Positions 7,054-64,000 of a stretch of 64,000 bases of DNA are shown here, in pieces; position 1 is the stretch's first letter; the number at the start of each line of letters is the position of its first letter. A program made the position numbers and the translations under genes. Source of the stretch: Podarcis muralis (Eukaryota). The stretch lies in the NCBI RefSeq assembly GCF_964188315.1, contig NC_135670.1, positions 15,748,001 through 15,812,000 of the forward strand. Direction: 5' to 3'. Under the pieces are notes generated by a model. That model worked only from the letters and a program-made list of their open reading frames with translations, did not search any database and was not told the DNA's origin.

Positions 7054-7729
7054 AAGGATCTAGGAGTCTTGGTTGACCACAAACTTGACATGAGCCAACA
7101 GTGTGACGCGGCCGCTAAAAAAGCCAATGCAATTCTGGGCTGCATCAATAGGAGTATAGCATCTAGATCAAGGGAAGTAATAGTGCCACTGTATTCTGCT
7201 CTGGTCAGACCTCACCTGGAGTACTTTGTCCAGTACTGGGCACCACAGTTCAAGAAGGACACTGATAAACTGGAACGTGTCCAGAGGAGGGCAACCAAAA
7301 TGGTCAAAGGCCTGGAAACGATGCCTTATGAGGAACGGCTAAGGGAGCTGGGCATGTTTAGCCTGGAGAAGAGGAGGTTAAGGGGTGATATGATAGCCAT
7401 GTTCAAATATATAAAAGGATGTCATATAGAGGAGGGAGAAAGGTTGTTTTCTGCTGCTCCAGAGAAGCGGACACGAAGCAATGGATCCAAACTACAAGAA
7501 AGAAGATTCCACCTAAACATTAGGAAGAACTTCCTGACAGTAAGAGCTGTTCGACAGTGGAATTTGCTGCCAAGGAGTGTGGTGGAGTCTCCTTCTTTGG
7601 AGGTCTTTAAGCAGAGGCTTGACAACCATATGTCAGGAGTGCTCTGATGGTGTTTCCTGCTTGGCAGGGGGTTGGACTCGATGGCCCTTGTGGTCTATTC
7701 CAACTCTATGATTCTATGATTCTATGATT
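7054..7729 (+). mobile_element. Young CR1 LINE, 5'-truncated (RT C-terminus + 3' UTR)
   Basis: ORF 7069-7647 reads [43 protein letters not shown], the typical CR1 ORF2 end. (ATTCTATG)n tail. Confidence 0.95.
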
Positions 7730-15035: not shown

Positions 15036-15317
15036 GCTGAATTGTAACAAATGTCAATCAGGTTTTCTGCAGAAAAGCACAGGACGAACCTCTACCCTAA
15101 TCTCAGTGCAAAGGCTTGATTTTTTTCCCACTGAAAAGAAGCCTGGAGTCTGTTATGGCCAAGAGGGAGGACTCCAGTTTTTCTACCTGGAAGGCAAACT
15201 TGTTTTGCTGGCTTAAGTACATGGCAAAGCGCCAACAAGATCATTGTGCAGAATTCACTGTTTATTTCTCATCCTGCCGCATCTTCCCAGGTTCCTCTGC
15301 TCCGTCTGGGGCACTGC

Positions 15318-16422
15318 CTATGTCTCGTCCTGGACTGCGTAGATCACAAAGTCATCGGGAAGGTCAGCCTGGGTGCTCCTCCTCTGCCTGTTCGCGGTGA
15401 GCCAGCCCGTGGCCAGGGCCATCTTGAGCTTGCGCAGCCTGTACATCAAGCTCACCAGCTCCTGCTCCATGTACCCCAGCGACTTCAGGCCAGACCGGAC
15501 AGAGCAGCCGCGCCGGGGCCCACAAGGCGTGTGCGGTGGGGGCATGCGGCAGTCCGTGACCTGATCAGAAAAAGGCAGCCGTGAGCAGTTGTTAAGACAG
15601 GGGCTGGGGAAGGCCACATTCCCTTGGAGGGGTCTGGGGAGCCACAACCAGGTAGGCTGCTCTTTCCTTGCGTGTTTTCTCCCACCCGCCTCTGGCATTT
15701 GCTGCCGGTTCATTTCCGGGCTTAACCCAAGGTGCTTGCAATAGTGTTTAAAACCCTGACAAACACAGGCCCCAAAGACCTGAAACACTGAATTCCCTAA
15801 TGACCCTTCTCAGCCCTGGTGGTTCTTCCTCTCCCTTCTATTTCCCACCACTAAGCCCTGGAGATGGAGGTTAATTGGGAGAGGAGAAGTCAAAATGTCT
15901 GTGCAATAATTTGCAGCCGGCTCCTTCCTGGCTGAAGCTTGCAAGCTGCATGTACAGGAAGAAGAAGAAGAAGAAGAAGAAGAAGAAGAAGAAGAAGAAG
16001 AAGAAGAAGAAGAAGAAGAAGAAGACACTCACACCCACCTAGAAATTCAAGCCCTCCTCCTGCTACTTGGAGGGGCCAGGAATACCTGGAGAGCCCTGGA
16101 GATCTGGCCACCCTATGTAGGCTTCTGCCCTTTGCCCCAAATGCCAGAGGGTGGGCTTGGAACCAGTTCTCTGCCGCCCCCAGGCACTCACCTCCGTGTC
16201 CCGCTGAGCCACTGGGCACTGCTCCATGGAGAAACCTCCCAGGAGCCAGACCAGGCTGTAGAAACACGCCAGGCTGAGGAGCCACAGCAGAATCTGCCCA
16301 TGCACCTGGTAGTTCTCCTGGTCCTCCGAGAGGCTGTTGTCCTGGTTGCTCAGGGCCCAGGCGGGGGCCAGCCACCCTAGCAAGCAGCAGATCCACCCAG
16401 CCAGGACAACATCCATGGCCAT
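15318..16422 (-). CDS. FAM209-like single-pass membrane protein A, 157 aa (exons 16422-16192, 15560-15318)
   Basis: Exon 1 MAMDVVLAGWICCLLGWLAPAWA (signal) ... ILLWLLSLACFYSLVWLLGG (TM) ... QRDTE|GTGAGT. Acceptor tttttctgatcag|, phase 0. Exon 2 contains SLGYMEQELVSLMYRLRKLKMALATG, versus recalled human FAM209A [26 protein letters not shown]; QRDTE matches QRDSE. AATAAA at 15261-15266. An in-frame upstream ATG exists at 16449. Confidence 0.75.
15958..16023 (+). repeat. (GAA)22 microsatellite
   Basis: Uninterrupted GAA tract counted directly, in the intron of FAM209-like A. Confidence 0.97.
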
Positions 16423-16470
16423 TTCCTGCCTTCCTCTGAGCCTTACCATGGCACTGAGCCACGAGCAGCA

Positions 16471-16480
16471 GTGACATCAC
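16471..16480. promoter_or_regulatory. CRE-variant GTGACATCAC upstream of FAM209-like A
   Basis: One mismatch from palindromic CRE GTGACGTCAC, 49 nt upstream of ATG 16422. Confidence 0.5.
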
Positions 16481-17605
16481 AAACCCCTGGGCAGGTGAGG
16501 TGGCCTCTTGCCCTCTCCTGGCAGGGAGAGCTGAGCCAAGAGACCCAGCAGGGACAGATGTCCTCTTTGATGGGTGGCCTTGTCTCCTTGAGAGGCTGTC
16601 AGAGGACAGTCCTCTCTATCTGGAGGGGTTGTGGGGGGGGCCATCCAAGGGGAGCAGAGCAAGGGCAGAAGCAGCAGACTGAGCAGGCACACCCACAATG
16701 GTGAGATGCATTTTATCTCTTCTTTAAAACATAGCCAATGGTTTCTGAACTGGATAATTAGCATATGGAAATGATATGCAAATTGCTACCCCACCAGGCT
16801 CCTTCAAGAGGAAGGGAAGGATATGAATGGAAGAAATAAATAAATGATATCTTGCCCTCTATTTTGGAGGCGGCGAGGGGGGCAATGTACTAAGTGGCCA
16901 CTTCTAGAGCTTGGGGATAACAACCAGGTGGTGGTTTGCACCATCTTGGGGCCCCAATTATTTGAATATGCAGGATTGGTTTCATTCTTTTTAAAAAATG
17001 CAAATAGCATCAGCTGTGTAGTGGGGGAGGAAACTGATAATTATCAGGACTGCAATAAGCTTCTGAAAGTGCTATTTGGCATGATGGGGACAGCCCTCGT
17101 TGGTGTTGAATGTGATCTTTCCTCCCCATGCAAATAGCAGCTTCAAAGGATTGAATTCAGGCAAGGAAATCAAAGAGTTAAAGCAAAAACACACATGCAA
17201 TGATGAAAGGTAACATTGGATCTATCCTCTGACAACAAAGGAGCAAGTATGGTTGCCTTTGCCTTCTCTAGATCAGTTAAGTTAGCTTACGACGAGAAAC
17301 CTATCCAAGTTATGTACATATAATAAACTACTTTATTATCCACTTACTCTGCAAGCATCTCTCTGTGTATAACTGCAAAAAGTAAGGTCTACTCTCCAAC
17401 CAAAATTCACAAGCCGTCTCCTTCTCCAACAGGTAATTTGGCTTGGGTGGGACGGGCAAAGTCCACTTGGCAGCTAGCCACAGGGGGAGGGTACACACAA
17501 TGGTGCAAGGGTCTGGGTACACACAATGTTCGTGTACATGCAGAACCCTTGGAACCGAACCCCTGCTTAAAATGCAATCATACTGCTATCAATGCCCCTC
17601 TCCTG

Positions 17606-17831
17606 TAGGGCTGGGCGATATCTGGTTTTCAAGATTGCGATGGCTCACCAACTAAACATTGAGATACAGTGATATATCACAATGTCTGAAATGAGGATGG
17701 AGCTATGCTTGGCTTCACGGTTTTTCCTGCATTGAGATTTTTGCTCGCGCCTGCTCTTGGGATTTGCTTCAGGAATCAAGAGAAGCATAGGCTGGCTTCA
17801 TGTTTGCCCCCACACTGTGATTTTTGCCTAG

Positions 17832-17874
<43 letters not shown>

Positions 17875-17967
17875 ATCATGATTTGCAATATATTGCCAGG
17901 TCTAAAATTATGATATGGACTTCAAACCAGTTTGGGATGATATATTGAGATATATCGCCCAGCCCTG
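17606..17967. mobile_element. hAT-type MITE
   Basis: TIRs tagggctgggcgata / tatcgcccagccctg; 8-bp TSD ctctcctg/ctctccag. Related copies near 32579 and 45939. Confidence 0.8.
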
Positions 17968-18159
17968 CTCTCCAGCATTATTCCCCCACCCCGACTTCTC
18001 CCTCTTCCCTGTGGCACTTCTGCCTGCATTTCCCAATTCCTTTGGCTGCAGAACCGGCGCAATTTCCGCCCCCATGAAGGTGCCCTGCAGCCTCCTCTGC
18101 CATAGATTTATTATTAGTATTTTGAGTTTTGCTTTCCAAACCCTCCCCGGTCCCCAGGC

Positions 18160-18648
18160 TCAGTCCTCCTCTTCGATGTCAAACACCACCAAGTTGAAGG
18201 CCTTGGCGCTTTCCCTGGCCAGCTGGCACTCGGGTGCCCGGCAGCCGCGGTGGCGCAGGGTGAGGGCGGCCTTGTGGTTCCGCACAAGCGTCACCAGCTT
18301 CACGAGCTCCATCTCCATCTGGAAGAAGGCGTGCAAGAGGTGCCGCTCCAGATCCTGTTCGTGGGCCAGCTGGGCTTCTTCCTGCAGAGGAGAGAGGAGG
18401 AGGAGGAGGAGGATGTTGGTCAGGCAGAGCGAGGGGCTGTGAACATTATAGGAAGATGCTTGAGATAAAACAGGCCAAGGGTGCCCCTAGCAGCCAGAGC
18501 AATGGTTGCCAAAGTGCTGATGAGGTCAAAAGGAAACCAGAGAAAAACTTTTAGCACCAACTAGGCTGCAGGAGTTGTCGAAGGAGGAGTCCAAGGCACC
18601 ATCCAACTGTCTTAGGGACTCCACTACAGATTTGTATAGGGTTTGCTC

Positions 18649-18693
<45 letters not shown>

Positions 18694-19686
18694 TTGTTAT
18701 TTATACCCCACCCATCTGGTTGGGTATCCTCAGCCACTCTGGGCAGCTTCCAACAAAAGATTAAAAATACATTACAACATCAGTCATTAAAAACTTCCCT
18801 AAACAGGGCTCCCTTCAGATGTCTTCGAAACGTCAGAAAGTTGTTTATTTCTTTGACATCTGACGGGAGGGCGTTCCACAGGGCGGGTGCCACTACCGAG
18901 AAGGCCCTCTGCCTGTTTCCCTGTAACTTCGCTTCTCGCAGTAAAGGCCCTCGGAGCTGGACCTCAGTGTCTGGGCTGAATGATGGGAGTGGAGATGCTC
19001 CTTCAGGTATACTGGGCTGAGGCCTTAGCCTGTTCAGTCTCCTAGCAGAGGTTTAGGACCTGAGTTTTCCTTCTCCTAGATGAGATAGCTTCCCAAGTGG
19101 ACAATCTCTTCCAGTACACCTCTGAATAACAGTTGCTCAGAATCCCAAGTGAGGAAGAGAGGATTGCTGTTGCACCCAGGTCCTGCTTGCTGGCGGCATC
19201 CCAGGACACTGGATTAGATGGGCCCCTCTATGACCTGACCCAGCTACAGGCCTCTCCTTGTGGAAATCTATTGTGATAACAGAACCTCCACGCTCAGGGA
19301 CAGTCTACCTCTGAATACCAGCTGATGGGGAACGATGACTGGAGAGTTGCCTTTGTGCTCAGGTACTGCTTGCGGATTTCCCTTTGGAGCACCTGGCTGG
19401 TCACTGTGGGGGCAGGATGAGCCCCCTTTGGCTCTTCTAATCTCCTTCTGTTTGTCTCCTGGAACCCCCCCCCCACCTCCTTTCCCTTTCTTACCCCTGC
19501 ATCTTCTGCCTTGGGCTTCGTGTGCAGCCATTTCGCTCCCAGGACCAGCACCAGAACCACAACGGAGCCAAATGCCAAGCTGTCCCAAGCCCCGGGGGAG
19601 ACGGCTTCCTTCTGCTCTTCCACCGCAGCACGGCGTACGGCAGAGCTTCCCTGGCAGAGCCACAACACCCACAGCAGGCTGTGCAT
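18160..19686 (-). CDS. FAM209-like single-pass membrane protein B, 137 aa (exons 19686-19495, 18381-18160)
   Basis: Exon 1 MHSLLWVLWLCQGSSA (signal) ... LAFGSVVVLVLVLGAKWL (TM) ... EDAG|GTAAGA. Acceptor ctctcctctgcag|, phase 0. Exon 2 has HAFFQMEMELVKLVTLVRNHKAAL and ends AFNLVVFDIEEED*. AATAAA at 18107-18112. An in-frame upstream ATG exists at 19785. Confidence 0.75.
18700..19020 (-). mobile_element. L2 LINE 3' fragment with (TAA)n tail
   Basis: Reverse complement gives RAFSVVAPALWNALP; adjacent (TAA)n at 18648-18693. Confidence 0.8.
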
Positions 19687-19736
19687 GGTGAATACAAATG
19701 GTGGCGGAGTCCCTGGGGCCAAGCGGGCCCTGGTCT

Positions 19737-19746
19737 GTGATGTCAC
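19737..19746. promoter_or_regulatory. CRE-variant GTGACATCAC (minus strand) upstream of FAM209-like B
   Basis: Plus strand gtgatgtcac, 51 nt upstream of ATG 19686. CCAAT on the minus strand near 19761-19766. Confidence 0.5.
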
Positions 19747-19874
19747 AGATGCGCCAGCCCCATTGGCCAGTCGCGTGGGTGACATCGGGAGAGGGTTCCG
19801 TCAGCTGGCCAATTGCTTATTTATTTGCTACCTTTTAATCCCCCCTGCTTTCCTCCCACATGTGGCACACATAT

Positions 19875-21339: not shown

Positions 21340-21920
21340 GCAGAGAGCAGCCTCGCCTTATCGTTTGCAGGACCTTGGTGCGCCCTTCGTGCAAAGCCTG
21401 GGCGCGTTCCCACGTGCAAAGCCTGCCTTAGGGAGGAGCAGGCGCGCCCCCCTCCCCAACGAATAGCTTCGGGAGCGGATCGCTCGTTCTGTGTCTGTGT
21501 CTGTGTCCCCCCACCCACACCAGCCACGTGATGGAGCAGCAGCCCAACATGGCGCAGTCCTCCTAGGCCGCTCCATCCCAGCCCGGCGGGGAGGCCATCT
21601 GGCCTTGCAGAGCATCCCGGAGACCGGCAGGTAAGTGAGGCGGGGGTGGAGGTGGAGGGGGCGCACCAGAGTCCCTCCCCCCCCCCAGTGCAAAAACCCA
21701 CGCCATGCACGGTTCCCCAAACTGCCTTTCCCGCCCCTACCCCCCAGGTCCGCGGCTGGGATGGAGCCACGTGCCGGGTGGGGGTGGGTGGGGGTCGCCT
21801 TCTTGTGCCCTCCTCCGCCAGAGGAGAGGACCCGAGAGACGGCGACAACCTACCCCACCCCGTCGAGGAGAAGCAGGAGCCTTGCATCCAGGCGGCAAGG
21901 CGAGGATGGAGGACGTTGTG
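21340..21920 (+). promoter_or_regulatory. CpG-rich promoter and non-coding exon 1 of the RBM4-like gene
   Basis: High GC/CpG, YY1-like AACATGGCG near 21547-21555, donor CAG|GTAAGT at 21630/21631. Confidence 0.65.
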
Positions 21921-22556
21921 GTCCATCCAGATGCGGCTCCCATCACCAACATCTTTGCACCCCGGTTGGGGCTGGAGGGCATTGGAGGCCAGCAGCACAT
22001 CTGGAGGGTGACATTTGGGGGCGGGGTCTTTCCCCATCATCCCTGCTCTGCTGTTCAGAAGGTGGGGAGGGGTCTGCCTGGGTTCCACCAGTTCTGCAAA
22101 CCTTGTGGGGTGCTGGACGGGTGAGGGAGAGTGGGCTTCTCAGGGGCGAGGGGAGGAAATTGGGGCACCTTGGGGAGACGCTCACTGAACTCACCCCATG
22201 TATTTCTCCACCAGATTGTGGTCCTAGCAGTTTAGGGTAGATCTCTTGGAAAAACCAGATATAGAACATTGCAAAATATCTCATGAACCGGTGACCAAGA
22301 TCAAAATAGTCAGTCTCTGTTGAATATATCTGTTTAGCAGAGATAAGCAGAACAATAATTTTTATTATTATTGCTACTATTGTACTGCATTTGCTCAAAG
22401 AAGCTAAAGGGGGCATGCATGATTCTCCTCCTCCCCATCCTATCCTCACAACAACCCTGAGAGGTAGGTTGGGATGAGAGAGGCAGTGACTGGTCCCAAG
22501 GTCACCCAGTTAGTTTGATGGCTGAGCAGAGATCCTGGACTCCCAGGTCCTAGTGC

Positions 22557-22803
22557 CATGGGTAGGCAACCTAAGGCCTGGGGGCCGGATCCGGCCCAAT
22601 CGCCTTCTAAATTTGGCCCGCGGACGGTCCGGAAATCAGTGTGTTTTTTACATGAGTAGAATGTGTGCTTTTATTTAAAATGCATCTCTGGGTTATTTGT
22701 GGGGCATAGGAATTTGTTCATTCCCCCCCAATATAGTCCGGCCCCCCACAAGGTCTGAGGGACAGTGGACCGGCCCCCTGCTAAAAAAGTTTGCTGACCC
22801 CTG
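22557..22803. mobile_element. hAT-type MITE inserted into an older SINE
   Basis: Ends catgggtaggcaacc / tttgctgacccctg; inverted homolog of 34989-35287. Confidence 0.75.
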
Positions 22804-23654
22804 TACAATCTAACCTCTACAACTACCAACATTCAATATCCTTATCCAAGATCTGTTGAATAAATCTTTTGAACAACTAGAACAATTTATTTATTTCATA
22901 AAATGTATATACCACTTGATTGTTTTTTTAAAAAGGCACTTCAAAGCAATTTACAAAAAGATAAAACAATAAAATTAGCAGTAAGATAAAAAAGTAATGT
23001 AAGGAATTCAAAGAGTTAAAATAACAATAGACGAAAAACAAGATGTAACAACTCTCTAAACAATCCAAAATGTGCTAAGAAACAATGACCGATCTCAATA
23101 ACCCAGCCAGTAAGTTGGAACGGGTCTGTAAGTCAGTGGGCAGTGCCCATGCTTGGCATGTAGAAGGCATCAGGTTGAATCCCCACCAGCATCTCCAGGT
23201 AGGGTTAGAAATGTCTGAAGCCCTGATGAGCCGCTGGCTGCCAATGTTGACCAGCGTCTTCCAGCATGGTGCCATCTAGATGTGCTCAGTTGGGCTGAAC
23301 ATCTGGAGGGGAGTTGTAGTCTAAAACATCTGGAGGGGGCACCAGGTTGGGCAAGGCTTGGAGGAAAAACCAGATATCTGCAGATGTGGAGATGATGATG
23401 ATAGTATTTATATGCCACCCATCTGACTGGGTTGCCCCAGCCACTTGGGGCAGCTTCCAACAAAATGTGAAAACACAATAAAACATCAGCCATTAACATT
23501 TTCCCTGAACAGGGCTGCCTTCAGGTATCTGTTGGACACCTGTTGGGAAGGGTGGGAAATGGATGCCTCTGCATGAGAGAGGAAGAAGGGAGGGTCTTTC
23601 CCTTCTGCTCTGACCCCCTTTCCTCCTTCTTGCCCTCAGCGCAATTCACCCGCC

Positions 23655-24620
23655 ATGGTGAAGATCTTTGTGGGGGGCCTGTCTCCCGTGGTGACGGCCG
23701 AGGAGCTGAGGAAGCTCTTTGAGCAGTACGGGCAGGTGAACGAGTGCGACATCCTCAAGAACTTTGCCTTTGTGCACATGGAGAAGGAGGACGAGGCCCA
23801 CCAGGCCATCAGCGCCCTGCACAAGAGCGAGTTCTACGGGGCCCACCTGACGGTGGAATACGCCACCTCCAAGATCCGAAACGCCACCAAGATCTATGTG
23901 GGGAACGTCTCCGCTAAGGCCACCACCTCCCAGATCCGCCAGCTCTTTGAGAGGTTCGGCAAAGTGGTGGAGTGCGACATCGTCAAGAACTACGCCTTCG
24001 TCCACATGGCCAAGGAGAGGGAGGCCATGGATGCCATCTTGAACCTCAACGACACACCTCTGGAGGACCAGAAAATCTTCGTCACCCTTTCCAAGAGCAA
24101 CAGCTCCCTGCGGGCCGCCAAGGGGGCGGCAGCAGCAGCAGCAGTGCCCACCCCGCCTCCCCCGTCCCCAAGCTACTACTTGTCTAGGGGGCGGATGCCA
24201 CCCCCGCCCCCGGCCTACACCCCCTACTGCCCCCGGGCCTGGTACGACAGGGAGTACTGCGACCGCTACTCGTACGAGCTCTACGACCGGGCCCGGGCCG
24301 CCTACGACCGGGCCTTGCCCCCTCCCCCTGCCGCCTATAGGGAAAGGAGCCCCGTGGGCAGGCGGACAGCTGCCTCCACCGCCGTCGTGGCCCAGTACGC
24401 CGACCCCTACGCAGCCGCCGCTGCTGCGGCTGCCGCCGCTGCCGCCACCGCCGCCGCCAACCAGACCTACAACCCGGCCTACAACCAGCCAGGGTACGCA
24501 GCCGCTGCTGCCGCTGCCGCCACATACTCCCAGTACAGCATAGGAACCGCCTACAACGTGGCGGAGTACTACGAGAGGTACGCCAGCGCATACGCCGCCC
24601 AGTATGCGCAGACCTTCTGA
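23655..24620 (+). CDS. RBM4/RBM14-family RNA-binding protein, 321 aa, two RRMs + Ala/Tyr/Pro low-complexity tail, single coding exon
   Basis: MVKIFVGGL...CDILKNFAFVHM and KIYVGNV...ECDIVKNYAFVHM match RBM4 RNP2/RNP1 motifs. YRERSPVGRR resembles RBM4 YGRDRSPLRR. Strong Kozak GCCATGG, acceptor at 23639, 3' UTR donor at 24643, acceptor at 25381, ATTAAA at 25976-25981. Exact ortholog unresolved, so no symbol. Confidence 0.9.
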   Translation: MVKIFVGGLSPVVTAEELRKLFEQYGQVNECDILKNFAFVHMEKEDEAHQAISALHKSEFYGAHLTVEYATSKIRNATKIYVGNVSAKATTSQIRQLFERFGKVVECDIVKNYAFVHMAKEREAMDAILNLNDTPLEDQKIFVTLSKSNSSLRAAKGAAAAAAVPTPPPPSPSYYLSRGRMPPPPPAYTPYCPRAWYDREYCDRYSYELYDRARAAYDRALPPPPAAYRERSPVGRRTAASTAVVAQYADPYAAAAAAAAAAAATAAANQTYNPAYNQPGYAAAAAAAATYSQYSIGTAYNVAEYYERYASAYAAQYAQTF

Positions 24621-25168
24621 GCACGGTGTGCCTTTTCCGGCAGTAAGTGTCTGGAGGTCCTTGGTTGCTTGGGGTGGGGGGTGGCGGCGGGGTGGGAGGA
24701 AGCAAGGGGTCGTGGGCAGGAGAAGGGATTGCCTCAGAAACACCCCACCTCCTGGGCTTCAGCTCTACGGTGCTGGGGAAACCCAGCCAGATGGGCGGGG
24801 TATAAATAATAAGTTAATATTATTATTACAGTGTATTCTGCTGCATGTGGGCATTTGATTTCTGCACCGTGTCTTCTCCCAGCGATCGAGGCGTTTGCAG
24901 GGACACCTTCTAGACAGGAAAGAAAGAATTTGAGGAGGGTTCAGTGAGGGGCAGGGCCTGGGGAAGATATTGAGGGCCAGATCCAGGCCTGGGGGGCCAC
25001 AGTTGACACGAGCACAGTATTGTCTGTCCTGGCTGGCAGCTGCTGTTTACGGCAGGCTTCGCCAAGCTGTTGCCCTCCAGATGTTAGAGGGAAGGGAAGG
25101 CTTGGGAGGTTGTGGGATCAGCCCAGCAAGGTGGGCTCTCAGCTAGCTGGCAGGCTGGTTGGCCGGCT

Positions 25169-25213
<45 letters not shown>

Positions 25214-26400
25214 ACGGGGTCCAAGATTGTGCCCACTCCCCATGTCTCTCTGTTTGCCTGTGCAAAATACAGTACATAGGATTCAAACCTCTGTGTGTAT
25301 ATGATTCACACTTATTACGTCTGTGTAAATACAGACACACACACGCATGCATGCACCTGAATTGTGTAGATCTCTTTGCAGGCATCGCCACCGCAGTGTC
25401 TGTGAGGCCCGTTGCTGATCACACGCTGACTTTTTACTCCAGCTTCCTTCCAAGGTTGGTGATGCTGCATTATTTTTACCCCTTATCCTCCGTCCTTCCT
25501 GCCCTCTCGCCTTTTTCTTCCTTCACCCTCTTTCCTTTTTTTTTTTTTGATCCGGTCGTTACCTTTTTGTTAAAAAAAAAAAAAACCTGCTTCGAAGACC
25601 CGCCGCCTGCCTCGCCAACCCCCGCCTTTCGAACCCGCCGTGAGCCGAAGACGGTTTTGCTCGTAGAAACGTGCCCGCTTTTTTGAACTCTCCTCGTGCC
25701 CGGAGCAGCGGGCGTTTGCCAACCTCCGAACTCTCTGCCGGCTAATTCTTTGCTTGCCCCGTGGTGTTGCTGCCTGCCGAACCTCTGACCCCCGTGTCGC
25801 CCAGATCTCTGCCGGGCTCCTGAGCCGGGGAGAGAGGCCTCCCTTTGCTTCTGCTGTATTCCTGGGTACTGTTCTGTTCTGTTCTGTTTGTTGCCTTTGT
25901 ACAATCGGTTAATGGAGCTTGTTCCTGTCGTGGCAACTCGTTTGCTTTTTCCCCTTATTTTTTTAAATGTCGATCATTAAATGGCTTTTACAGAACCTCT
26001 CGCGTCTCGTCGTGAAATTACACCCACCCCAATCCCCGCCGCCGCCCGACTTCGCCTCTGCCTTCGATTTCCTCCACCCCACTTTCTGCATGGGGCGGGA
26101 GGGAATTGCCCATTCTTGCTGATCTCTACCGCATCGCCCTGTCCCCAAGTTTACTTCCTGCCTTCCCTCCCTCTGCTTTCCCTCCAGAGTGATCCTCTCT
26201 TTGGGCTCTGCCTCTCTCTTTGCCGCCACTAACTCCATCCGTCCGTCCGTCTCGCTCGGAGAGTTAGGGAACCATTGTCAAATCCGCAGCAAATTCTGGC
26301 TCCCGTCTGTGGGGCTGACTAACGCAGCCTGGGCTGGGCGTCTTGCAGTTTTTTAACCCTGTTTTTTCTCCCTCCATTGACTTTCTCTTTCTGTGGACAG

Positions 26401-32274: not shown

Positions 32275-35200
32275 TCACAGCTGTAGATGCTTCAGGTGCA
32301 GCTGGAAGATTTCCTCGGCCCTCTGGAGGTACTCTGCTGTCTTCTTCTTCACGGCCTCCCTCCGGGCTGCGTCGGGGTCCCCTGAAAGAAGGGAGGAGCG
32401 GGTCTTGGCTGATTGCTACAACCCTCCTGGCAACAAAAGGGTGGGAGGGCAGTGGCTTAGCGGTTAGAGGAATCTGCCTTGCATGCCCAAAGCCCAACAA
32501 AGACGAGTAACAGGACAGATGAAATTAAGTACATAGTCAAACCTCTGGAACTCACGTCTGCAGCAGGCAGTGATGACTAGGGCTGGGCAACATCTGGTTT
32601 TCATCATTGCGATATATCGCCAGCTAAGCATCGCAATATACTGATATATCACGATGTCTGAAATAAGCTTGGAGCTATGTAGAGGCATTGGACGGGCTCC
32701 ACGTGTTTTTACCGCATTGTGATATTTGCATTGCGCGCCCACACGTCGTGATTCACGATAAATTGGCAGGTCAAAAATTATGAAACCATTTCCCTCCCTT
32801 ATTTTTGAGGTTTTTTCTTGCAATCAACCAGTATATAAATCTTTTGAAATAAATAAAGGAGATTAAAGTGAGGGGGGGCAGGCAGGATGCCCTCAGAGAC
32901 CTTGAAAAGGCAAAGTTTACAGCCACGTTTACTTGGAAGCAAGCCTCAGCGAGTTGAAATGGGCTGACTTCCTAGAAGCCACATGGACTTGTGGCTCTGA
33001 CTCTTGGAGACCAATTCCCAGGCCCTCCACATGGGGAAAAGCCAGGTGTCCAGGGGGAGAGGAGCTGGAATATAGTTTGGGGACCAGGCATCGCCCGCTA
33101 CCTTGCAGTCCCTGCAGCAAGAGGTCAACGCCGCTGCGGTAGCCACAGAAAGCCTCCTTGTAGTCCTTGGCAGCTTCACTCTCCAAGGCCTGCCTGATGC
33201 GCTCTGTGGCCAACGGCAGGTAACTGCCTGGGTCCGACGCAGCAGCTCCTTCCTGGGCTACCTGGCCCGCTCCTGCGCTGGGGGCAGAAAGCGCTGGTCC
33301 ATGTCCTGAGGCAGCGAGAGCAGCCAGCTCTTCCTCGTGGGAGAGGCTGGCTGCACCGGGGTCTGGACAGAACAAAGAAAAATGTTATTTATCTATTAAC
33401 ATTTGCACACCACTGCAGCTTTTGAAAAAAGAGAAAAGAAAATCACAACGGCTTGCGGCAGTGGTGTCCAAACTTTTTTTAGGGTTGAAGTTGTTGAGGG
33501 TTTTTTTAAAGGATTTTACCCCTGGGGCCGGATTAAACCAGCCAGCGGGCCGGATTAGGACCCCAAAACCTTGGACATGCCTGGCTTACGGCAATAAAAC
33601 CGTACAATGAAACTATTAAAAAGTTAAAAACAGATCTCAATGAACCGTTGCAGAACGATGCATTTTTAACTGCCTACACCAGGGGTCTGCAACCTTTAAG
33701 ACAAAAAGAGCCACTTGGACCCGTTTCCGAAGAAAAAACAACAACTGGGAGCCGCAAAACCATTGCGACATTTAAAACAAATATATCTCCGGAGCCGCGA
33801 TCTAACAGCGGGCGGGAAGGTGACGTCGGGACGGTGCGTGACTAACGCACGCACCGCCCCCATGCGACGTCACAGCCAGTACAGCGCCCGCCACAGTGAG
33901 GAGTGTCGGGGCGCACAATGCGCCTCCTCCCCTCGCTAGTATCCGCCCCAGAGCCGCGGCAAAGATGTAAAAGAGCCACATGCGGCTCCAGAGCCGCGGG
34001 TTGCAGACCCCTGGCCTACACAGATACAGTGGAATAGAAAAGTCTCCAGCAGGCATTTAAAAGTTGGCACAAAAGGCGCCTGCTGAATCTGTAGTGGAAG
34101 GGAGTTTCACAGGACCGGGCCAACAACACTGAAGGCTCAGGTTCTTCTTGTTGTCAAATGAGCCTTGCAGCTCTGGGAATAACCAGCGACACTCCTGCAG
34201 ATGACCTCAGTGGCCAAACTGGGATATAAGGGTCCAAGTGGTCCCTGCAGTACCCTGGACCAAAGTTGTTTTGTAAATTAATGAAAGGGCCTTGAACCTG
34301 GCTCAGCTGTTTTAACAAGGCTGTCACATGTTCTTGGTCAGATGCTCCCATCAGCAGTCTAGTTGCTGCATTCTGCACCAGCTGGAGCTTTCGAACCAGG
34401 CCCAAGGGCAGCCCCACACAAAGCACATTGCAGTAGTCCAGCTTCACATACAGTGGTCAGGCTATACCTGACCAGGAACGGCCATAGCTAGCAAACCAAG
34501 GAGGATGATTTGGCCCCTAAGATGTAACCAGGAGTACCCTGCAAGCCATGTACTTGCTCCATCCAGAATACTTCCCACTGCTGAGTATCGTGGCAACAGT
34601 ACAGAAAAACTAAAAATCTCAACAATGCAAATTGCTTGCTGGTCATCTTCCTGGAACCGGATCAGTGTTCAGAAGTGGGGCGGGACCCTGCAACTTGGCT
34701 ACCTATATCCTACATGGTCCAGGGGCCCCCTCTCCGCCGCTTGGCGTTTGAGCCCACCTACCTTCCTTTGAGAAGGGATCAAACAGGGCTAACTCCTGGA
34801 GCGACAAGGGGCCGCGGGAGGGCGACCCCAGACCCTTCTCGCCTTCCTCCTCCTCTTCATCGCCGCCAAAGGCAAAGAGAGCATCCAAGGCCTCATCGTC
34901 ACACTTCTCGGGTGAGGAGGGCCTCCCTGTGGAGGGGACACTGATCAGTGCAAGGCATTGATAACCCCAATCCAGAAAACGCCTAGAGCAGGGGTCAGCA
35001 AACGTTTTCAGCAGGGGGCCAGTCCCCTGTCCATCAGACCTTGTGGGGGGCCGGACTATATATATTTAAAAGAACCAATTCCTATGCCCCACAAATAACC
35101 CAGAGATGCATTTTAAATAAAAGCACACATTCTACTCATGTAAAAACACTAGGCAGGCCCCACAAATAACCCAGAGATGTATTTTAAATAAAAGGACACA

Positions 35201-61500: not shown

Positions 61501-64000
61501 CACATCCCCCTTCACTTTGGGACCTTTCAAGTTCAAGTCAAAATCTGGCATGGAGATTTTGGGGGTCTTAAAATGCATATCAGGCATCTTAAACTTGGGA
61601 CCTCTGAGTTTTCCTTCAGGACCTTCAAGCTCAACATCAGGAACCGAAACATCCAGTTTAGGGCCATGTATATCCACATCTGGTGCTTTCAAATCACCTC
61701 CAATCTTGGGAAGAGATACATCCACATCTCCCTTCAGTTTTGGGCCCTTCAAGTTGAGGTCTACATCTGGCATGGATAATTTTGGTGCTTTGATGTTCAT
61801 CTCAGGCATCTTAAATTTAGGTCCTTTCAGTTTTCCATCAGGTCCCTCAATGTCAATGTCAGGAGCATCTATCTTAGGACCTTTGATATCTATTTCAGGC
61901 CCTCTTAGATCCCCTTCAAATTCTGGGACGGAAACATCCACATCACCTTTAAGTTTAGGCCCTTTCAAGTTTAGATTCATATCTGGCATGGAGATTTTAG
62001 GTGCCTTGAAATGCATGTCCGGCATCTTGAATTTAGGGCTTTTCCATTTTCCTTCTGGGCCTTCGAGTTCAACATCAGGAACATCTACATCTAATTTCGG
62101 CCCTTTAATATCGACGTCGGGCCCCTTCAGATCACCTTCAAACTTCGGTACAGACACATCCACGTCACCCTTCACTTTCGGCCCTTTGAGATTTAGATCA
62201 AAATCTGGCATGGAGATTTTGGGTGCCTTAAAGTGCATGTCAGGCATCTTAAACTTGGGACCTCTGAGTTTTCCTTCAGGACCTTCAAGCTCAACATCAG
62301 GAAGGTCAACATCTAGTTTGGGACCCTGGATATCCACATCTGGGCCTTTCAGGTCACCTTCCAGCTTTGGAACCGAAAGGTCAACATCTCCCTTCAGTTT
62401 AGGGCCTTTCAAATTGAAATCAACATCTGGCATGGAGATTTTGGGTGATTTGAAGTGCATGTCAGGCATCTTAAATCTGGGACCTTTCACTTTTCCTTCT
62501 GGGCCTTCAATGTCTAGGCTTGGTGCATCAATGTCCACCTTCGGAAGAGAAACATCAAGGTCTGCTTTGGGGAGGCTCACGTCCACATCTGGGCCCTCTG
62601 CCTTGAAGCTAGGCATTCCAAATTTTGGCATTTTGAATTTTGGCATTTTCAGTTTTCCTTCTGGGCCATGGAGGTCGACGTCCGGAGCATCAATATCCAG
62701 TTTGGGACCTTTGATGTCAATTTCTGGACCCTTCAAATCACCTTCAACCTTGGGTAGGGAAACGTCCACATCACCTTTCAGTTTGGGGCCTTTGAGGTTG
62801 AAATCCACATCAGGCATGGAGATTTTGGGTGCTTTGATGTTCATTTCAGGCATCTTGAATTTAGGGCTTTTCCATTTTCCATCTGGGCCTTCAAGTTCAA
62901 CATCTGGAATATCTACATCTAATTTCGGCCCTTTGATATCAATTTCGGGGCCCTTCAGATCACCTTCCAACTTCGGCACTGAAACATCCACAGCCCCCTT
63001 CACTTTCGGCCCTTTCAAGTTCAAATCAAAATCTGGCATGGAGATTTTGGGTGCTTTGAAGTGCATGTCCGGCATCTTAAACTTGGGACCTTTCACTTTT
63101 CCTTCTGGGCCTTCAATGTCCAGGCTTGGTGCATCAATGTCCACTTTCGGCAGAGAAACATCAATGTCTGCTTTTGGAAGATTTACATCCACCTCTGGAC
63201 CTTCTGCTTTGAAGCTTGGCATTCCAAATTTGGGCATTTTGAATTTTGGCATTTTCAGTTTTCCTTCTGGGCCATGGAGGTCGACGTCCGGAGCATCAAT
63301 ATCCAGCTTGGGACCTTTGATGTCAATTTCTGGACCCTTCAAATCACCTTCAAGCTTTGGTAGGGAAACATCCACATCTCCTTTCAGTTTAGGGCCTTTG
63401 AGGTTGAAATCCACATCAGGCATGGAGATTTTAGGTCCTCTGATGTTCATTTCAGGCATCTTGAATTTAGGGCTTTTCCATTTTCCTTCTGGGCCTTCGA
63501 GTTCAACATCAGGAACATCTACATCTAATTTCGGCCCTTTAATATCGACGTCGGGCCCCTTCAGATCACCTTCAAACTTCGGTACAGACACATCCACGTC
63601 ACCCTTCACTTTCGGCCCTTTGAGATTTAGATCAAAATCTGGCATGGAGATTTTGGGTGCCTTAAAGTGCATGTCAGGCATCTTAAACTTGGGACCTCTG
63701 AGTTTTCCTTCAGGACCTTCAAGCTCAACATCAGGAAGGTCAACATCTAGTTTGGGACCCTGGATATCCACATCTGGGCCTTTCAGGTCACCTTCCAGCT
63801 TTGGAACCGAAAGGTCAACATCTCCCTTCAGTTTAGGGCCTTTCAAATTGAAATCAACATCTGGCATGGAGATTTTGGGTGCTTTGAAGTGCATGTCCGG
63901 CATTTTAAACTTGGGACCTTTCACTTTTCCTTCTGGGCCTTCGATGTCCAAGCCTGGTCCTTCAATGTCTACTTTGGGAGCAGAAAGGTCAATGTCTGCT
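58516..64000 (-). CDS. AHNAK: AHNAK giant exon, C-terminal 1800+ aa (open at the right edge)
   Basis: Uninterrupted ORF with the AHNAK repeats GPKFKMPDMHFKAPKISMPDVDFNLKGPK and the C-terminal KSKIKMPKF...SPKGKFSFFKGKKSRHRSSSFSDE...KLKFGTFGG motifs. The frame stays open to 64000; the ORF-track start at 63951 is a TTG, not the real start. Confidence 0.97.
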   Translation of the reverse strand, partial: ADIDLSAPKVDIEGPGLDIEGPEGKVKGPKFKMPDMHFKAPKISMPDVDFNLKGPKLKGDVDLSVPKLEGDLKGPDVDIQGPKLDVDLPDVELEGPEGKLRGPKFKMPDMHFKAPKISMPDFDLNLKGPKVKGDVDVSVPKFEGDLKGPDVDIKGPKLDVDVPDVELEGPEGKWKSPKFKMPEMNIRGPKISMPDVDFNLKGPKLKGDVDVSLPKLEGDLKGPEIDIKGPKLDIDAPDVDLHGPEGKLKMPKFKMPKFGMPSFKAEGPEVDVNLPKADIDVSLPKVDIDAPSLDIEGPEGKVKGPKFKMPDMHFKAPKISMPDFDLNLKGPKVKGAVDVSVPKLEGDLKGPEIDIKGPKLDVDIPDVELEGPDGKWKSPKFKMPEMNIKAPKISMPDVDFNLKGPKLKGDVDVSLPKVEGDLKGPEIDIKGPKLDIDAPDVDLHGPEGKLKMPKFKMPKFGMPSFKAEGPDVDVSLPKADLDVSLPKVDIDAPSLDIEGPEGKVKGPRFKMPDMHFKSPKISMPDVDFNLKGPKLKGDVDLSVPKLEGDLKGPDVDIQGPKLDVDLPDVELEGPEGKLRGPKFKMPDMHFKAPKISMPDFDLNLKGPKVKGDVDVSVPKFEGDLKGPDVDIKGPKLDVDVPDVELEGPEGKWKSPKFKMPDMHFKAPKISMPDMNLNLKGPKLKGDVDVSVPEFEGDLRGPEIDIKGPKIDAPDIDIEGPDGKLKGPKFKMPEMNIKAPKLSMPDVDLNLKGPKLKGDVDVSLPKIGGDLKAPDVDIHGPKLDVSVPDVELEGPEGKLRGPKFKMPDMHFKTPKISMPDFDLNLKGPKVKGDVDVSVPKLEGDLKGPEIDIKGPKLDVDVPDVELEGPEGKWKSPKFKMPEMNIRGPKISMPDVDFNLKGPKLKGDVDVSLPKVEGDFKGPEIDIKGPQLDIDAPNVDIHGPDGKVKFPKMKLPKFGMPEFKGEGPHIDVNVPKGELELSGPSLNIEGPEGKLKGPKLKTPQISMPEIDLNLKGPKVKGDVDVALPKVEGSLKGPGIDIQGPGIEAKGPEIDLECPDVNLEGPEGNVKLPKFKMPKFGFGAKSPKADISLPEGELNVESPDISISGKGKKSKFKMPKIHMSGPKVKGKKAGFAVSGDMDASMKSPDLEGSISVPEASLKGDMNIKSPKGKKSMFGKLSFPDVEFDIKSPMFKADASLPKVEGEIKSPGIDVSSPSLKSPDLDITVPSGSASLPDVNIGGPDIHLKKPKFKFSGGNVDLAGPKLEGDLRGPSVDANLSAPDISLKGPSVNLPSMGVSAPSMSAPDINLKGPKLKGDIDLPQMEGQGLEGKLKMPKFGLPKIGKPGVKVEGPEVDLQGKLPSASVDVSAPSIGGSMSAPAVDVSLKGPKFGGDMGLSGDIKGPKIGFGTPDVDVSGFEGKLKMPKASGLDVNVSAPDLDVKAPTVKMASGGGISAPDFDVNLKGPKIKGDFGISGGITSPKVAVEAPDVNVEGSGVGIKIPCMKLPQFGIASEGGSISGPQIKGPEVDLKGHDISAPGFDLNVKGPSLKGDVNVSGGMKGQQIGVGAPGVKISGMGLDTGAPDVSLRGPSLNVSAPKVSGPELNMGMQGSGGLQFSGPKAGIDLKGPKLEVKGPSVGVNVPHGHLESPSGQVSFPKMKMPKFVVAGQELTGREVGVDVEFPQAPEASFHAGAVNVELEEPDIKLKKSKIKMPKFPFSKSKVKGSVGSPEISVSASGCEGELQASLGSLEGDVEVEGSASPKGKFSFFKGKKSRHRSSSFSDEHSSHSTPTGTLEHDKGKQAKLKFGTFGGIGAKTKGSYEVSGSDDEMK

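What the first reader, a model, noticed from the sequence alone, without database searches (positions are those of the whole stretch)
15261..19746. Tandem pair of FAM209-like membrane protein genes in a lizard
Two compact two-exon genes share an architecture: signal peptide, short luminal segment, TM helix, phase-0 intron, amphipathic helix, acidic hydrophobic end, and AATAAA about 50 nt after the stop. By my hand alignment to recalled human FAM209A ([29 protein letters not shown]), gene A matches 11/29 and gene B 10/29 positions. Gene A also has QRDTE at the exon end, against human QRDSE. Mammalian FAM209 is a spermatid inner-nuclear-membrane partner of DPY19L2 needed for acrosome biogenesis, and has been described mainly from mammals. 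A squamate pair would push this module back to the amniote ancestor. The paralogs are very divergent (old duplication) and lie in 11q13-like synteny, not the human 20q13 position. The ORF track splits both genes, so automated annotation could miss them.
Basis: partly seen in the sequence, partly recalled or inferred. Interest (0 to 1): 0.88.

Follow-up and report, generated by a model that had tools for sequence, protein, structure and literature searches.

The report
Squamate tandem pair of FAM209-like genes
Two neighbouring small membrane-protein genes of the wall lizard are real, spliced and conserved across lizards and geckos, and are probably distant relatives of mammalian FAM209, a sperm acrosome-anchoring protein that the literature calls mammal-only.

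Summary
On the minus strand of this Podarcis muralis window lie two two-exon genes: A (157 aa) and B (137 aa). Both have GT..AG phase-0 introns and an AATAAA 51 and 47 nt after the stop. Both splice junctions appear in RNA contigs of a related species. Both models already exist in NCBI, as isoforms X2 and X1 of one "uncharacterized" locus, LOC144325759, so annotation did not miss them.

The B-then-A pair also occurs in Podarcis lilfordi, Phrynocephalus, Sceloporus and Gekko. Both proteins occur in Sphaerodactylus, and a skink model fuses them. The duplication therefore predates crown squamates. A- and B-type proteins are homologous in the C-terminal domain (hhalign 93%, E 2.5e-7).

Homology to FAM209 is probable but not proven:
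- Pfam PF15206 is the best hit for most members, always at the same profile positions, but below the 27-bit cut-off (A 23.3 bits, B 17.6).
- Foldseek ranks human FAM209A first of 550,129 entries for gene A, but not for gene B.
- Mouse Fam209 fragments from a paper's primer table carry the squamate-invariant motifs (LEMELV; NNVTIYEIWGEED).

The locus resembles human 11q12-q13.1, not 20q13. Testis expression and function are untested. The scan noted this same stretch once before (s1-188966), not on other DNA.

The parts
16192..16422 (-). Gene A, exon 1 coding part: signal peptide, short luminal segment and TM helix, 77 codons. NCBI's model starts at the in-frame ATG at 16449.
   Evidence: RNA contigs cover it (X5 record 20, X7 record 3).
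15561..16191 (-). Gene A intron: GT..AG, phase 0, containing a (CTT)n microsatellite at 15946-16038.
   Evidence: X7 joint 15558->16190 (cut +2), with 26 nt on the shorter side. X5 record 20 has a 10-nt overhang, GCAGTCCGTG, equal to the start of exon 2.
15318..15560 (-). Gene A, exon 2 coding part plus stop: cytoplasmic domain with the amphipathic helix MEQELVSLMYRLRKLKMAL and the acidic end FVIYAVQDET.
   Evidence: Pfam FAM209 21.5 bits at profile positions 94-147. 100% match to XP_077776137.1.
15261..15266 (-). Gene A polyadenylation signal AATAAA, 51 nt after the stop.
   Evidence: X5 depth falls from 68 to 2 here.
16471..16480 (-). CRE-like element GTGATGTCAC, 57 nt upstream of the gene A ATG.
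   Evidence: The same octamer lies at -59 to -62 in the Phrynocephalus and Gekko A genes.
19495..19686 (-). Gene B, exon 1 coding part: signal peptide, luminal segment and TM helix, 64 codons. NCBI's model starts at ATG 19785, but the N-termini of orthologues support 19686.
18382..19494 (-). Gene B intron: GT..AG, phase 0, containing a highly repeated SINE-like element and an (ATT)n run at about 18640-19120.
   Evidence: Contigs X5 record 21 and X7 record 5 join 18380|19494.
18160..18381 (-). Gene B, exon 2 coding part plus stop: helix QMEMELVKLVTLVRNHKAAL, an HRGC....C motif and the acidic end FNLVVFDIEEED.
   Evidence: Pfam FAM209 19.9 bits at profile positions 93-134. 100% match to XP_077776136.1. 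AF2 helix with pLDDT 85-92.
18107..18112 (-). Gene B polyadenylation signal AATAAA, 47 nt after the stop.
   Evidence: X7 record 5 ends at 18103.
19737..19746 (-). CRE-like element GTGACATCAC, 59 nt upstream of the gene B ATG, with a CCAAT box at 19762-19766.
   Evidence: It is conserved at -63/-64 in the B genes of Phrynocephalus (canonical TGACGTCA) and Gekko, together with the GGCCAATG box.
16423..18159 (-). Intergenic spacer between B and A. It is transcribed as read-through in some runs, which probably explains why NCBI files both genes under one locus.
   Evidence: X5 record 21 runs from B exon 1 and exon 2 on to 16696. X1 and X3 cover 18382 down to 15100 evenly.

Best explanation
The stretch holds two separate, expressed, selectively constrained genes in tandem, B upstream of A, both on the minus strand.

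Shown:
- Each gene encodes a small type-I single-pass membrane protein. Exon 1 carries a cleavable signal peptide, about 20 luminal residues and one TM helix.
- After a phase-0 intron, exon 2 carries a cytoplasmic domain of about 75-80 residues. Its core is an amphipathic helix (ME-x-[ED]-L-V-x-L-x3-[VL]-R-x2-K-x2-L), and it ends in h-V-[VI]-Y-x-[IV]-x-acidic.
- The two genes are paralogues from a duplication older than crown Squamata.
- Each keeps its own CRE-like promoter element about 60 nt upstream of the ATG and its own polyA signal.

Inferred, about 0.75-0.8: both are distant homologues of mammalian FAM209 (Pfam PF15206). The family would then date at least to the amniote ancestor.

Inferred by analogy only, about 0.35: they are made in post-meiotic male germ cells, with transcription driven by a CREM-type factor through the CRE. 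They insert into the ER and nuclear envelope, and use the conserved cytoplasmic/nucleoplasmic helix to bind a DPY19L-type multipass partner and perinuclear scaffold proteins. This would help tether the acrosome to the spermatid nucleus, as mouse FAM209 does.
For: Gene reality:
- Exact NCBI models exist.
- Splice junctions are seen in RNA contigs of two samples.
- dN/dS between P. muralis and P. lilfordi is 0.17 for A and 0.28 for B, and 0.09 for B exon 2, against about 8% non-coding divergence.

Family and age:
- The exhaustive profile search returned only 8 further proteins. The 6 with a named source are all squamate, and they fall into A-type and B-type groups.
- Phrynocephalus carries the two genes under adjacent locus tags, in the same order and on the same strand.
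- Gekko carries B then A, with an RRM gene upstream in one of its two copies (L004).
- Sceloporus has an unannotated B exon 2 upstream of its A gene.

Paralogy:
- hhalign of A-type against B-type gives probability 93.4% and E 2.5e-7 over 52 C-terminal columns.
- tblastn of a Phrynocephalus A-type protein hits the Sceloporus B exon at E 6.5e-5.

FAM209 link:
- PF15206 was reported for 12 of 14 full-length proteins scanned and was the top-listed family for 11 of them. It always maps to profile positions about 89-147, with or without the TM region at 38-60.
- E-values are 5.6e-5 for A, 3.1e-3 for B and 2.9e-4 for Phrynocephalus B. The fused skink model gives 1.6e-6 at 28.3 bits, above the 27-bit cut-off.
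- Foldseek on the gene A model ranks human FAM209A first of 550,129 Swiss-Prot models. The alignment runs end to end (3-157 against 4-168) at 20% identity. FAM209B ranks 10th.
- The mouse Fam209 RT-PCR primer encodes LEMELV. The knock-in arm plus the guide RNA give the C-terminus LYNNVTIYEIWGEEDSE. This aligns to the squamate C-terminal motif, and only 1 of 20,000 shuffles scores as well.
- Size and topology match mouse FAM209: 170 aa, signal peptide 1-20, one TM, N-terminus luminal (PMC8627553).

Promoter: TGAYRTCA lies at -57 to -64 of both genes in three squamate families.

Restricted expression: two deep P. muralis RNA-seq runs have no reads on any exon, while other runs have spliced transcripts.
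Against: - Neither window protein reaches Pfam's gathering score (23.3 and 17.6 against 27 bits). Some orthologues (Gekko A, Sceloporus A, Sphaerodactylus A full length) give no or very weak FAM209 hits.
- No mammalian, bird or turtle protein reached E<1e-3 in the search of 1.84 billion proteins. A three-sequence profile would not be expected to reach them, however.
- Foldseek's E-value for FAM209A is only 0.15, on a model with pLDDT 53. The gene B model does not retrieve FAM209.
- The language-model neighbour searches list other small membrane proteins at low scores, not FAM209.
- The locus is not syntenic with the mammalian Tfap2c-Bmp7 position of Fam209.
- The tissue of the expressing runs is unknown. 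Transcripts in some runs extend upstream of the CRE of gene A.
- No localisation or interaction data exist.
Confidence: 0.68

Rival explanations
1. The pair belongs to a squamate-restricted family of small type-I membrane proteins that is unrelated by descent to FAM209. The resemblance comes from a simple shared architecture (signal peptide, TM, amphipathic helix, acidic tail) and chance or convergent motif similarity.
For: - All Pfam hits for single domains are below the gathering score.
- BLASTP cannot even link A to B.
- No non-squamate hit appeared in the exhaustive search.
- The chromosomal neighbourhood is different.
- The language-model searches and the gene B fold search do not find FAM209.
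- QRDTE is not conserved.
Against: - Two groups that share only about 25% identity both pick the same one of 24,736 Pfam families, at the same profile positions.
- FAM209A ranks first of 550,129 in Foldseek.
- The two squamate-invariant motifs are present, in the same order and at the very C-terminus, in real mouse fragments.
- Shuffle controls give P of about 1e-4 or less.
Confidence: 0.24
2. There is one gene, not two. This is NCBI's view: a single locus LOC144325759 whose isoforms X1 and X2 use alternative promoters and exons.
For: - Both proteins are filed under one LOC.
- Read-through RNA runs from B into the spacer and across A.
- A skink gene model fuses B with A's exon 2.
Against: - The two coding sequences share no exon.
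- Each has its own conserved CRE/CCAAT promoter, start codon, intron, stop and AATAAA.
- The P. lilfordi, Phrynocephalus and Gekko annotations call them as two genes.
- In X5 and X7, exon depth far exceeds spacer depth, and the B contig of X7 ends at B's polyA site.
Confidence: 0.05
3. The open reading frames are chance features, or the genes are decaying pseudogenes.
For: The proteins are short, the sequence is GC-rich with many overlapping ORFs, and structure-prediction confidence for A is low.
Against: - Spliced transcripts exist.
- dN/dS is 0.17-0.28.
- Frames, introns and motifs are intact in at least six squamate families.
Confidence: 0.02

Closest known systems
Mammalian FAM209 (FAM209A/B in human, Fam209 in mouse; Pfam PF15206)
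   Same: - Length 137-170 aa, with a cleavable signal peptide, a short luminal segment, a single TM and a C-terminal cytoplasmic/nucleoplasmic domain (PMC8627553).
- PF15206 is the best hit for most family members, and the match is collinear with the profile.
- Foldseek top hit for gene A.
- Shared LEMELV-type helix motif and N-x-V-x-I-Y-E-I-..-EED C-terminus.
   Different: - Scores fall below Pfam's cut-off, and identity to human FAM209A is about 20%.
- The squamate genes form an ancient tandem pair; the primate FAM209A/B duplication is recent.
- The locus is next to SNX15/SAC3D1/AHNAK-like genes, not between TFAP2C and BMP7.
- B-type proteins have an extra conserved H-x2-C-x4-C motif.
- Testis specificity, inner-nuclear-membrane location and DPY19L2 binding are unknown here.
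NCBI Gnomon models XP_077776137.1 / XP_077776136.1 (LOC144325759 isoforms X2 / X1, Podarcis muralis), and the P. lilfordi proteins CAI5797949.1 / CAI5797948.1
   Same: Identical exon-intron structures and coding sequences for both genes.
   Different: - The NCBI models start at upstream ATGs (16449 and 19785). For B, this buries the signal peptide and includes the conserved CRE in the coding sequence.
- NCBI files two non-overlapping coding sequences as isoforms of one gene.
- The models carry no family name.
Other small testis-type single-pass proteins suggested by the language-model search (TMCCDC2 PF15844, TEX46 PF17671)
   Same: Small chordate membrane proteins with a helical cytoplasmic part.
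   Different: Cosine scores of 0.49-0.58 are far below the level at which such hits mean anything. There was no Pfam hit to these families at E<=10.

Membership tests
FAM209 (Pfam PF15206) | Whole-protein score at or above Pfam's gathering cut-off (27 bits) | tested here: not met
   - Gene A scores 23.3 bits (E 5.6e-5) and gene B 17.6 bits (E 3.1e-3).
- The best single-domain orthologue scores 21 bits.
- Only the fused two-domain skink model passes, at 28.3 bits.
FAM209 (Pfam PF15206) | Architecture: signal peptide, short luminal part, one TM, C-terminal domain of about 90 aa, total about 130-170 aa | tested here: met
   for the lizard proteins. The mouse description is in PMC8627553. The Pfam match of A spans profile positions 38-147 of 149 in one stretch.
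FAM209 (Pfam PF15206) | Conserved helix motif of the FAM209 domain (mouse ...LEMELV...) | tested here: met
   The mouse RT-PCR primer translates to LEMELV. In squamates, M-E-x-[ED]-L-V is invariant or nearly so across 16 domains. Only 6 mouse residues were available.
FAM209 (Pfam PF15206) | C-terminal hydrophobic-aromatic-acidic end (mouse NNVTIYEIWGEEDSE-stop) | tested here: met
   The mouse end was derived from the knock-in oligo and the guide RNA. One G is evidently lost in the printed oligo. The peptide aligns to squamate HMM positions 69-79, and 1 of 20,000 shuffles scores as well.
FAM209 (Pfam PF15206) | Two coding exons with the intron just after the TM segment | not tested
   The lizard side is shown. 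The mammalian gene structure is known to me only from memory, and the paper mentions only a 'first exon'.
FAM209 (Pfam PF15206) | Orthologous genomic position (mammals: between TFAP2C and BMP7, 20q13) | tested here: not met
   The window carries an RBM4-like gene, an SNX15-like MIT exon, a SAC3D1-like gene and AHNAK-like repeats. The Fam209 position in mammals comes from the title of PMC6137755 in the FAM209 hit list and from general knowledge.
FAM209 (Pfam PF15206) | Testis / round-spermatid-specific expression | tested here: inconclusive
   Expression is restricted: there are no reads in two deep RNA-seq runs, and spliced transcripts in others. Tissue labels are coded, however, and cannot be queried. 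The conserved CRE near the start fits spermatid promoters but is not specific to them.
FAM209 (Pfam PF15206) | Inner-nuclear-membrane localisation and association with DPY19L2 | not testable with these tools
   This needs antibodies or tagging and co-immunoprecipitation in lizard testis.

The most novel reading that the evidence does not exclude
FAM209 is not a mammalian invention. An amniote-ancestral FAM209 gene survives in squamates as an anciently duplicated, CRE-driven tandem pair in an 11q13.1-like interval next to SNX15. Both copies act with DPY19L-type proteins at the spermatid nuclear envelope. The acrosome-nucleus anchoring module studied in globozoospermia would then predate mammals, and the mammalian gene would have been relocated to 20q13.
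Probability: 0.3. Interest if true: 0.65.

Novelty: new variant of a known kind. Interest (0 to 1): 0.5.

Why it matters
The paper that defined FAM209's function states that orthologues exist only in mammals (PMC8627553). A conserved squamate pair with the same architecture and motifs would move the origin of this acrosome-anchoring component back to the amniote ancestor or earlier. It would also name a set of currently "uncharacterized" reptile genes, and supply natural sequence variation showing which residues of the FAM209 domain matter: ME.ELV, R..K, and the C-terminal VIY.I-acidic end. Finally, it would give a testable case of subfunctionalised paralogues in sperm-head formation outside mammals. 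This extends a small family; it is not a new kind of system.

Tried and rejected
- BLASTP of A against B found nothing. Paralogy became visible only with profiles.
- The word-indexed homologue searches were run on exon-2 regions and on an 11-sequence alignment at E<=10. They were meant to fetch mammalian FAM209 sequences for a profile-profile test. They returned only squamate proteins, so that test could not be run.
- The PDB sequence search with the family profile gave only noise, at E above 0.7.
- The ESM-Atlas feature searches for A and for a B orthologue gave low-scoring, mixed small membrane proteins and no FAM209.
- The Atlas shape search gave generic helical matches.
- Foldseek on the gene B model gave no FAM209 among the top 30.
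- An HMM scan of all six frames of the window found no third copy.
- MAJIN, the germ-cell inner-nuclear-membrane protein that lies near SNX15 in human, was considered as a positional analogue. It was rejected: its topology differs (C-terminal anchor; from general knowledge) and there was no Pfam hit.

Full report
**What is there.** The window is Podarcis muralis chromosome sequence (record OZ076970.1). Two compact genes lie head to tail on the minus strand.

Gene A:
- It has an ATG at 16422, with an alternative in-frame ATG at 16449.
- The donor follows 16192 (GAG|GTGAGT) and the acceptor precedes 15560 (TTTTTCTGATCAG|GTC). The stop is at 15320-15318 and AATAAA at 15266-15261.
- The spliced product is 157 aa.

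Gene B:
- It has an ATG at 19686.
- The donor follows 19495 (GGG|GTAAG) and the acceptor precedes 18381. The stop is at 18162-18160 and AATAAA at 18112-18107.
- The spliced product is 137 aa.

Both introns are phase 0. Each protein has four features:
- a hydrophobic N-terminus ending in a small-x-small motif (AWA|L, SSA|V);
- one strong TM segment;
- a maximum helical hydrophobic moment (0.46-0.47) that falls exactly on the conserved motif;
- a C-terminus with net charge -4 or -5.

**The genes are real and already modelled.** The word-indexed protein search returned NCBI XP_077776137.1 ("uncharacterized protein LOC144325759 isoform X2", 166 aa) for gene A. It returned XP_077776136.1 (isoform X1, 170 aa) for gene B. 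Both have exactly these exons but upstream start codons. Podarcis lilfordi has both as separate hypothetical proteins.

RNA evidence comes from contigs of a closely related species:
- Run X7 has a joint 15558->16190 (cut +2, CT..AC on the plus strand, 26 nt on the shorter side). This is the gene A intron.
- A second X7 contig joins 18380|19494, the gene B intron, and ends at 18103, just past B's AATAAA.
- Run X5 shows the same B junction. For A it shows a 10-nt overhang identical to the start of exon 2. Exon depth is 68-114 against 14 in the intron.
- Two deep P. muralis RNA-seq runs (1.9 billion letters sampled from each) have no read on any exon, so expression is restricted.

In X5, and more so in X1 and X3, RNA continues from B's exon 2 through the spacer and across A. 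This read-through probably explains why NCBI files two non-overlapping coding sequences under one locus, and why a Lerista gene model fuses B with A's exon 2.

Between P. muralis and P. lilfordi, dN/dS is 0.17 for A and 0.28 for B (0.09 in B's exon 2). Non-coding divergence is about 8%. The counts are small but point consistently to purifying selection.

**A squamate-wide tandem pair.** A profile of A plus B was searched against 1.84 billion representative proteins. It returned ten proteins with E<1e-3: the two queries and eight others. The six with a named source are all squamate.
- A-type proteins came from Phrynocephalus, Sphaerodactylus and Sceloporus.
- B-type proteins came from Phrynocephalus, Pogona and Sphaerodactylus, plus two unnamed Logan contigs.
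- A later search added Gekko kuhli (B-type) and the fused Lerista model.

The gene order is conserved:
- In Phrynocephalus the two genes have consecutive locus tags and lie B then A on one strand, about 4 kb apart.
- In Gekko kuhli both copies of the locus have B, then A about 3.3 kb downstream. One copy (L004) also has an RRM (RBM4-like) gene upstream on the other strand, as in Podarcis.
- In Sceloporus an unannotated B exon 2 lies upstream of an A gene whose C-domain exon is duplicated.

Every copy has the same two-exon layout. Geckos are among the earliest-branching squamates (general knowledge), so the duplication predates crown Squamata.

BLASTP cannot align A with B. hhalign of the A-type alignment against the B-type alignment gives 93.4% probability and E 2.5e-7 over the C-terminal 52 columns. 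One cross-type tblastn hit reaches E 6.5e-5. The window has no third copy.

**Conserved promoter element.** I checked it across species. A TGAYRTCA octamer sits 57-64 nt upstream of the signal-peptide ATG of both genes in Podarcis, Phrynocephalus and Gekko. It is the canonical TGACGTCA in the Phrynocephalus B gene. The B genes also keep a GGCCAATG box about 20 nt further upstream.

For gene B this element lies inside NCBI's N-terminal extension. CRE-bearing, TATA-less promoters are typical of CREM-dependent spermatid genes (general knowledge). They are not specific to such genes, however, and some contigs of gene A extend upstream of the element.

**Relation to FAM209.** Evidence for:
1. Pfam. 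PF15206 was reported for 12 of the 14 full-length family proteins scanned, and was the top-listed family for 11 of them. It always maps to profile positions about 89-147, and for several proteins it extends collinearly back over the TM region (38-60).
   - Gene A: 23.3 bits, E 5.6e-5.
   - Gene B: 17.6 bits, E 3.1e-3.
   - Phrynocephalus B: 21 bits, E 2.9e-4.
   - The exon-2 products alone, without any TM segment: 21.5 and 19.9 bits.
   - The fused skink model: 28.3 bits, E 1.6e-6, above the 27-bit cut-off because two domains add up.
2. Foldseek. The AlphaFold model of A (low confidence, pLDDT 53) was searched against 550,129 Swiss-Prot models. Human FAM209A ranks first, aligned end to end (3-157 against 4-168) at 20% identity. 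FAM209B ranks tenth. The E-value (0.15) is not significant by itself. The chance that an arbitrary top hit is this particular family is of order 1e-5. Foldseek also uses residue similarity, so this is not independent of item 1.
3. Real mouse sequence. Table S5 of PMC8627553 lists a Fam209 RT-PCR primer whose complement encodes LEMELV. It also lists a knock-in oligo and a guide RNA. One G is evidently missing in the printed oligo, since otherwise the FLAG tag would be out of frame. ME-x-[ED]-L-V is the invariant core of the squamate domain. The squamate C-termini read FNLAVYDIVEED (B-type) and D.VIYTIQDET (A-type). The mouse 17-mer aligns to exactly that part of the squamate HMM, and 1 of 20,000 shuffles does as well.
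4. This is a lead only.
5. Mouse FAM209 is described as 170 aa, with signal peptide 1-20, one TM, a luminal N-terminus and a cytoplasmic/nucleoplasmic C-terminus. This is the same plan.

Evidence against:
- No single-domain protein reaches Pfam's cut-off, and a few orthologues give no hit.
- No non-squamate protein was reached at E<1e-3. That is expected for a three-sequence profile and a 1.8-billion library, so it says little.
- The gene B model and both language-model searches do not retrieve FAM209.
- The locus is not the mammalian one.

I put homology at about 0.75-0.8. I do not file the proteins as Pfam members.

**Neighbourhood.** The order, running from upstream of B to the window's end, is as follows.
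- An RBM4-like two-RRM gene lies at 21906-25418 on the plus strand, divergent from B.
- An exon with a MIT domain lies at 32932-33375 on the minus strand. This resembles SNX15.
- A SAC3/GANP gene, like SAC3D1, lies at 50200-51102.
- A 1,811-codon open frame of AHNAK-type repeats lies at 58516-63951.

In Sceloporus, a gene with a faint cystine-knot hit lies downstream of A. This could be GPHA2.

**Mechanism.**
- Shown: two co-oriented genes, each with its own conserved CRE-like promoter element, make spliced mRNAs for type-I membrane proteins. Their constrained part is a cytoplasmic amphipathic helix (AF2 pLDDT 85-92 in B) plus a short hydrophobic-aromatic-acidic tail.
- Inferred from probable homology: mouse FAM209 sits in the inner nuclear membrane of spermatids and associates with DPY19L2, SUN2/KASH2 and ACTL7A. 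It is required to keep the acrosome attached (PMC8627553; PMC13752377). The lizard proteins are most likely nuclear-envelope or ER adaptors of male germ cells, binding partners through the conserved helix.
- The two ancient paralogues differ. A-type proteins have a P-x-R-G-C motif and a conserved LW.LSL..FY TM segment. B-type proteins have H-x2-C-x4-C. This suggests divided or paired roles.
- None of this was testable here.

**Verdict.** Novelty is moderate. The genes are annotated but unnamed, no paper in the library links FAM209 to reptiles, and the primary paper says the family is absent outside mammals. This is an extension of a known small family, not a new kind of system.

Noticed in passing
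window 58516-63951 (-): An open frame of 1,811 codons made of AHNAK-type repeats (e.g. MPKFKMPKFGMPSFKAEGPEVDVNLPKADIDVS). It is probably part of the giant AHNAK exon. It gave no Pfam hit.
   Followed up: partly
window 32932-33375 (-) and 50200-51102 (+): An exon with a MIT domain (SNX15-like) and a single-exon SAC3/GANP gene (SAC3D1-like). Together they place the window in a human 11q13.1-like block.
   Followed up: partly
window 21906-25418 (+), ORF 23655-24620: An RBM4-like gene with two RRMs, divergently oriented about 2 kb upstream of gene B. An RRM gene occupies the same position next to one Gekko kuhli copy of the pair (L004).
   Followed up: partly
window about 17600-17990: A repeat of about 380 bp in the B-A spacer, bounded by inverted ends (CAGGGCTGGGCGATAT ... 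ATATCGCCCAGCCCT) and containing a (GT)n run. RNA contig depth is 10-20 times that of its surroundings, with many internal joints. It looks like a MITE-type transposon family.
   Followed up: no
window about 18640-19120 (gene B intron): A SINE-like repeat followed by (ATT)n. Summed contig depth reaches about 50,000 in RNA runs, so the family is abundant in transcripts genome-wide.
   Followed up: no
window 18159-18480, run X19: Single-cell RNA-seq reads cover gene B exon 2 mostly in the '+' orientation label, with no reads on exon 1. I could not decide whether this reflects the library chemistry or an antisense transcript.
   Followed up: no
L006:11236-11508 and L006:12216-12479 (Sceloporus undulatus): The A-type gene has a tandemly duplicated C-domain exon, giving a 240-aa protein with two FAM209-like domains. 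The B-type exon 2 at L006:8488-8712 is not annotated.
   Followed up: partly
L003 and L004 (Gekko kuhli CM122936.1, at 3.9 Mb and 0.85 Mb): The whole B-A locus is present twice on one chromosome, with near-identical coding sequence and in opposite orientation. This is either a recent segmental duplication or an assembly duplicate.
   Followed up: no
P0013 (Lerista edwardsae): A gene model fuses the complete B-type protein, without its last residues, to the A-type exon 2. This could be a prediction artefact or a real read-through splice form.
   Followed up: no
window 7069-7647 (+): A 192-aa open frame resembling the C-terminal end of a CR1/L2-type LINE ORF2 (judged by eye). It gave no Pfam hit.
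   Followed up: no
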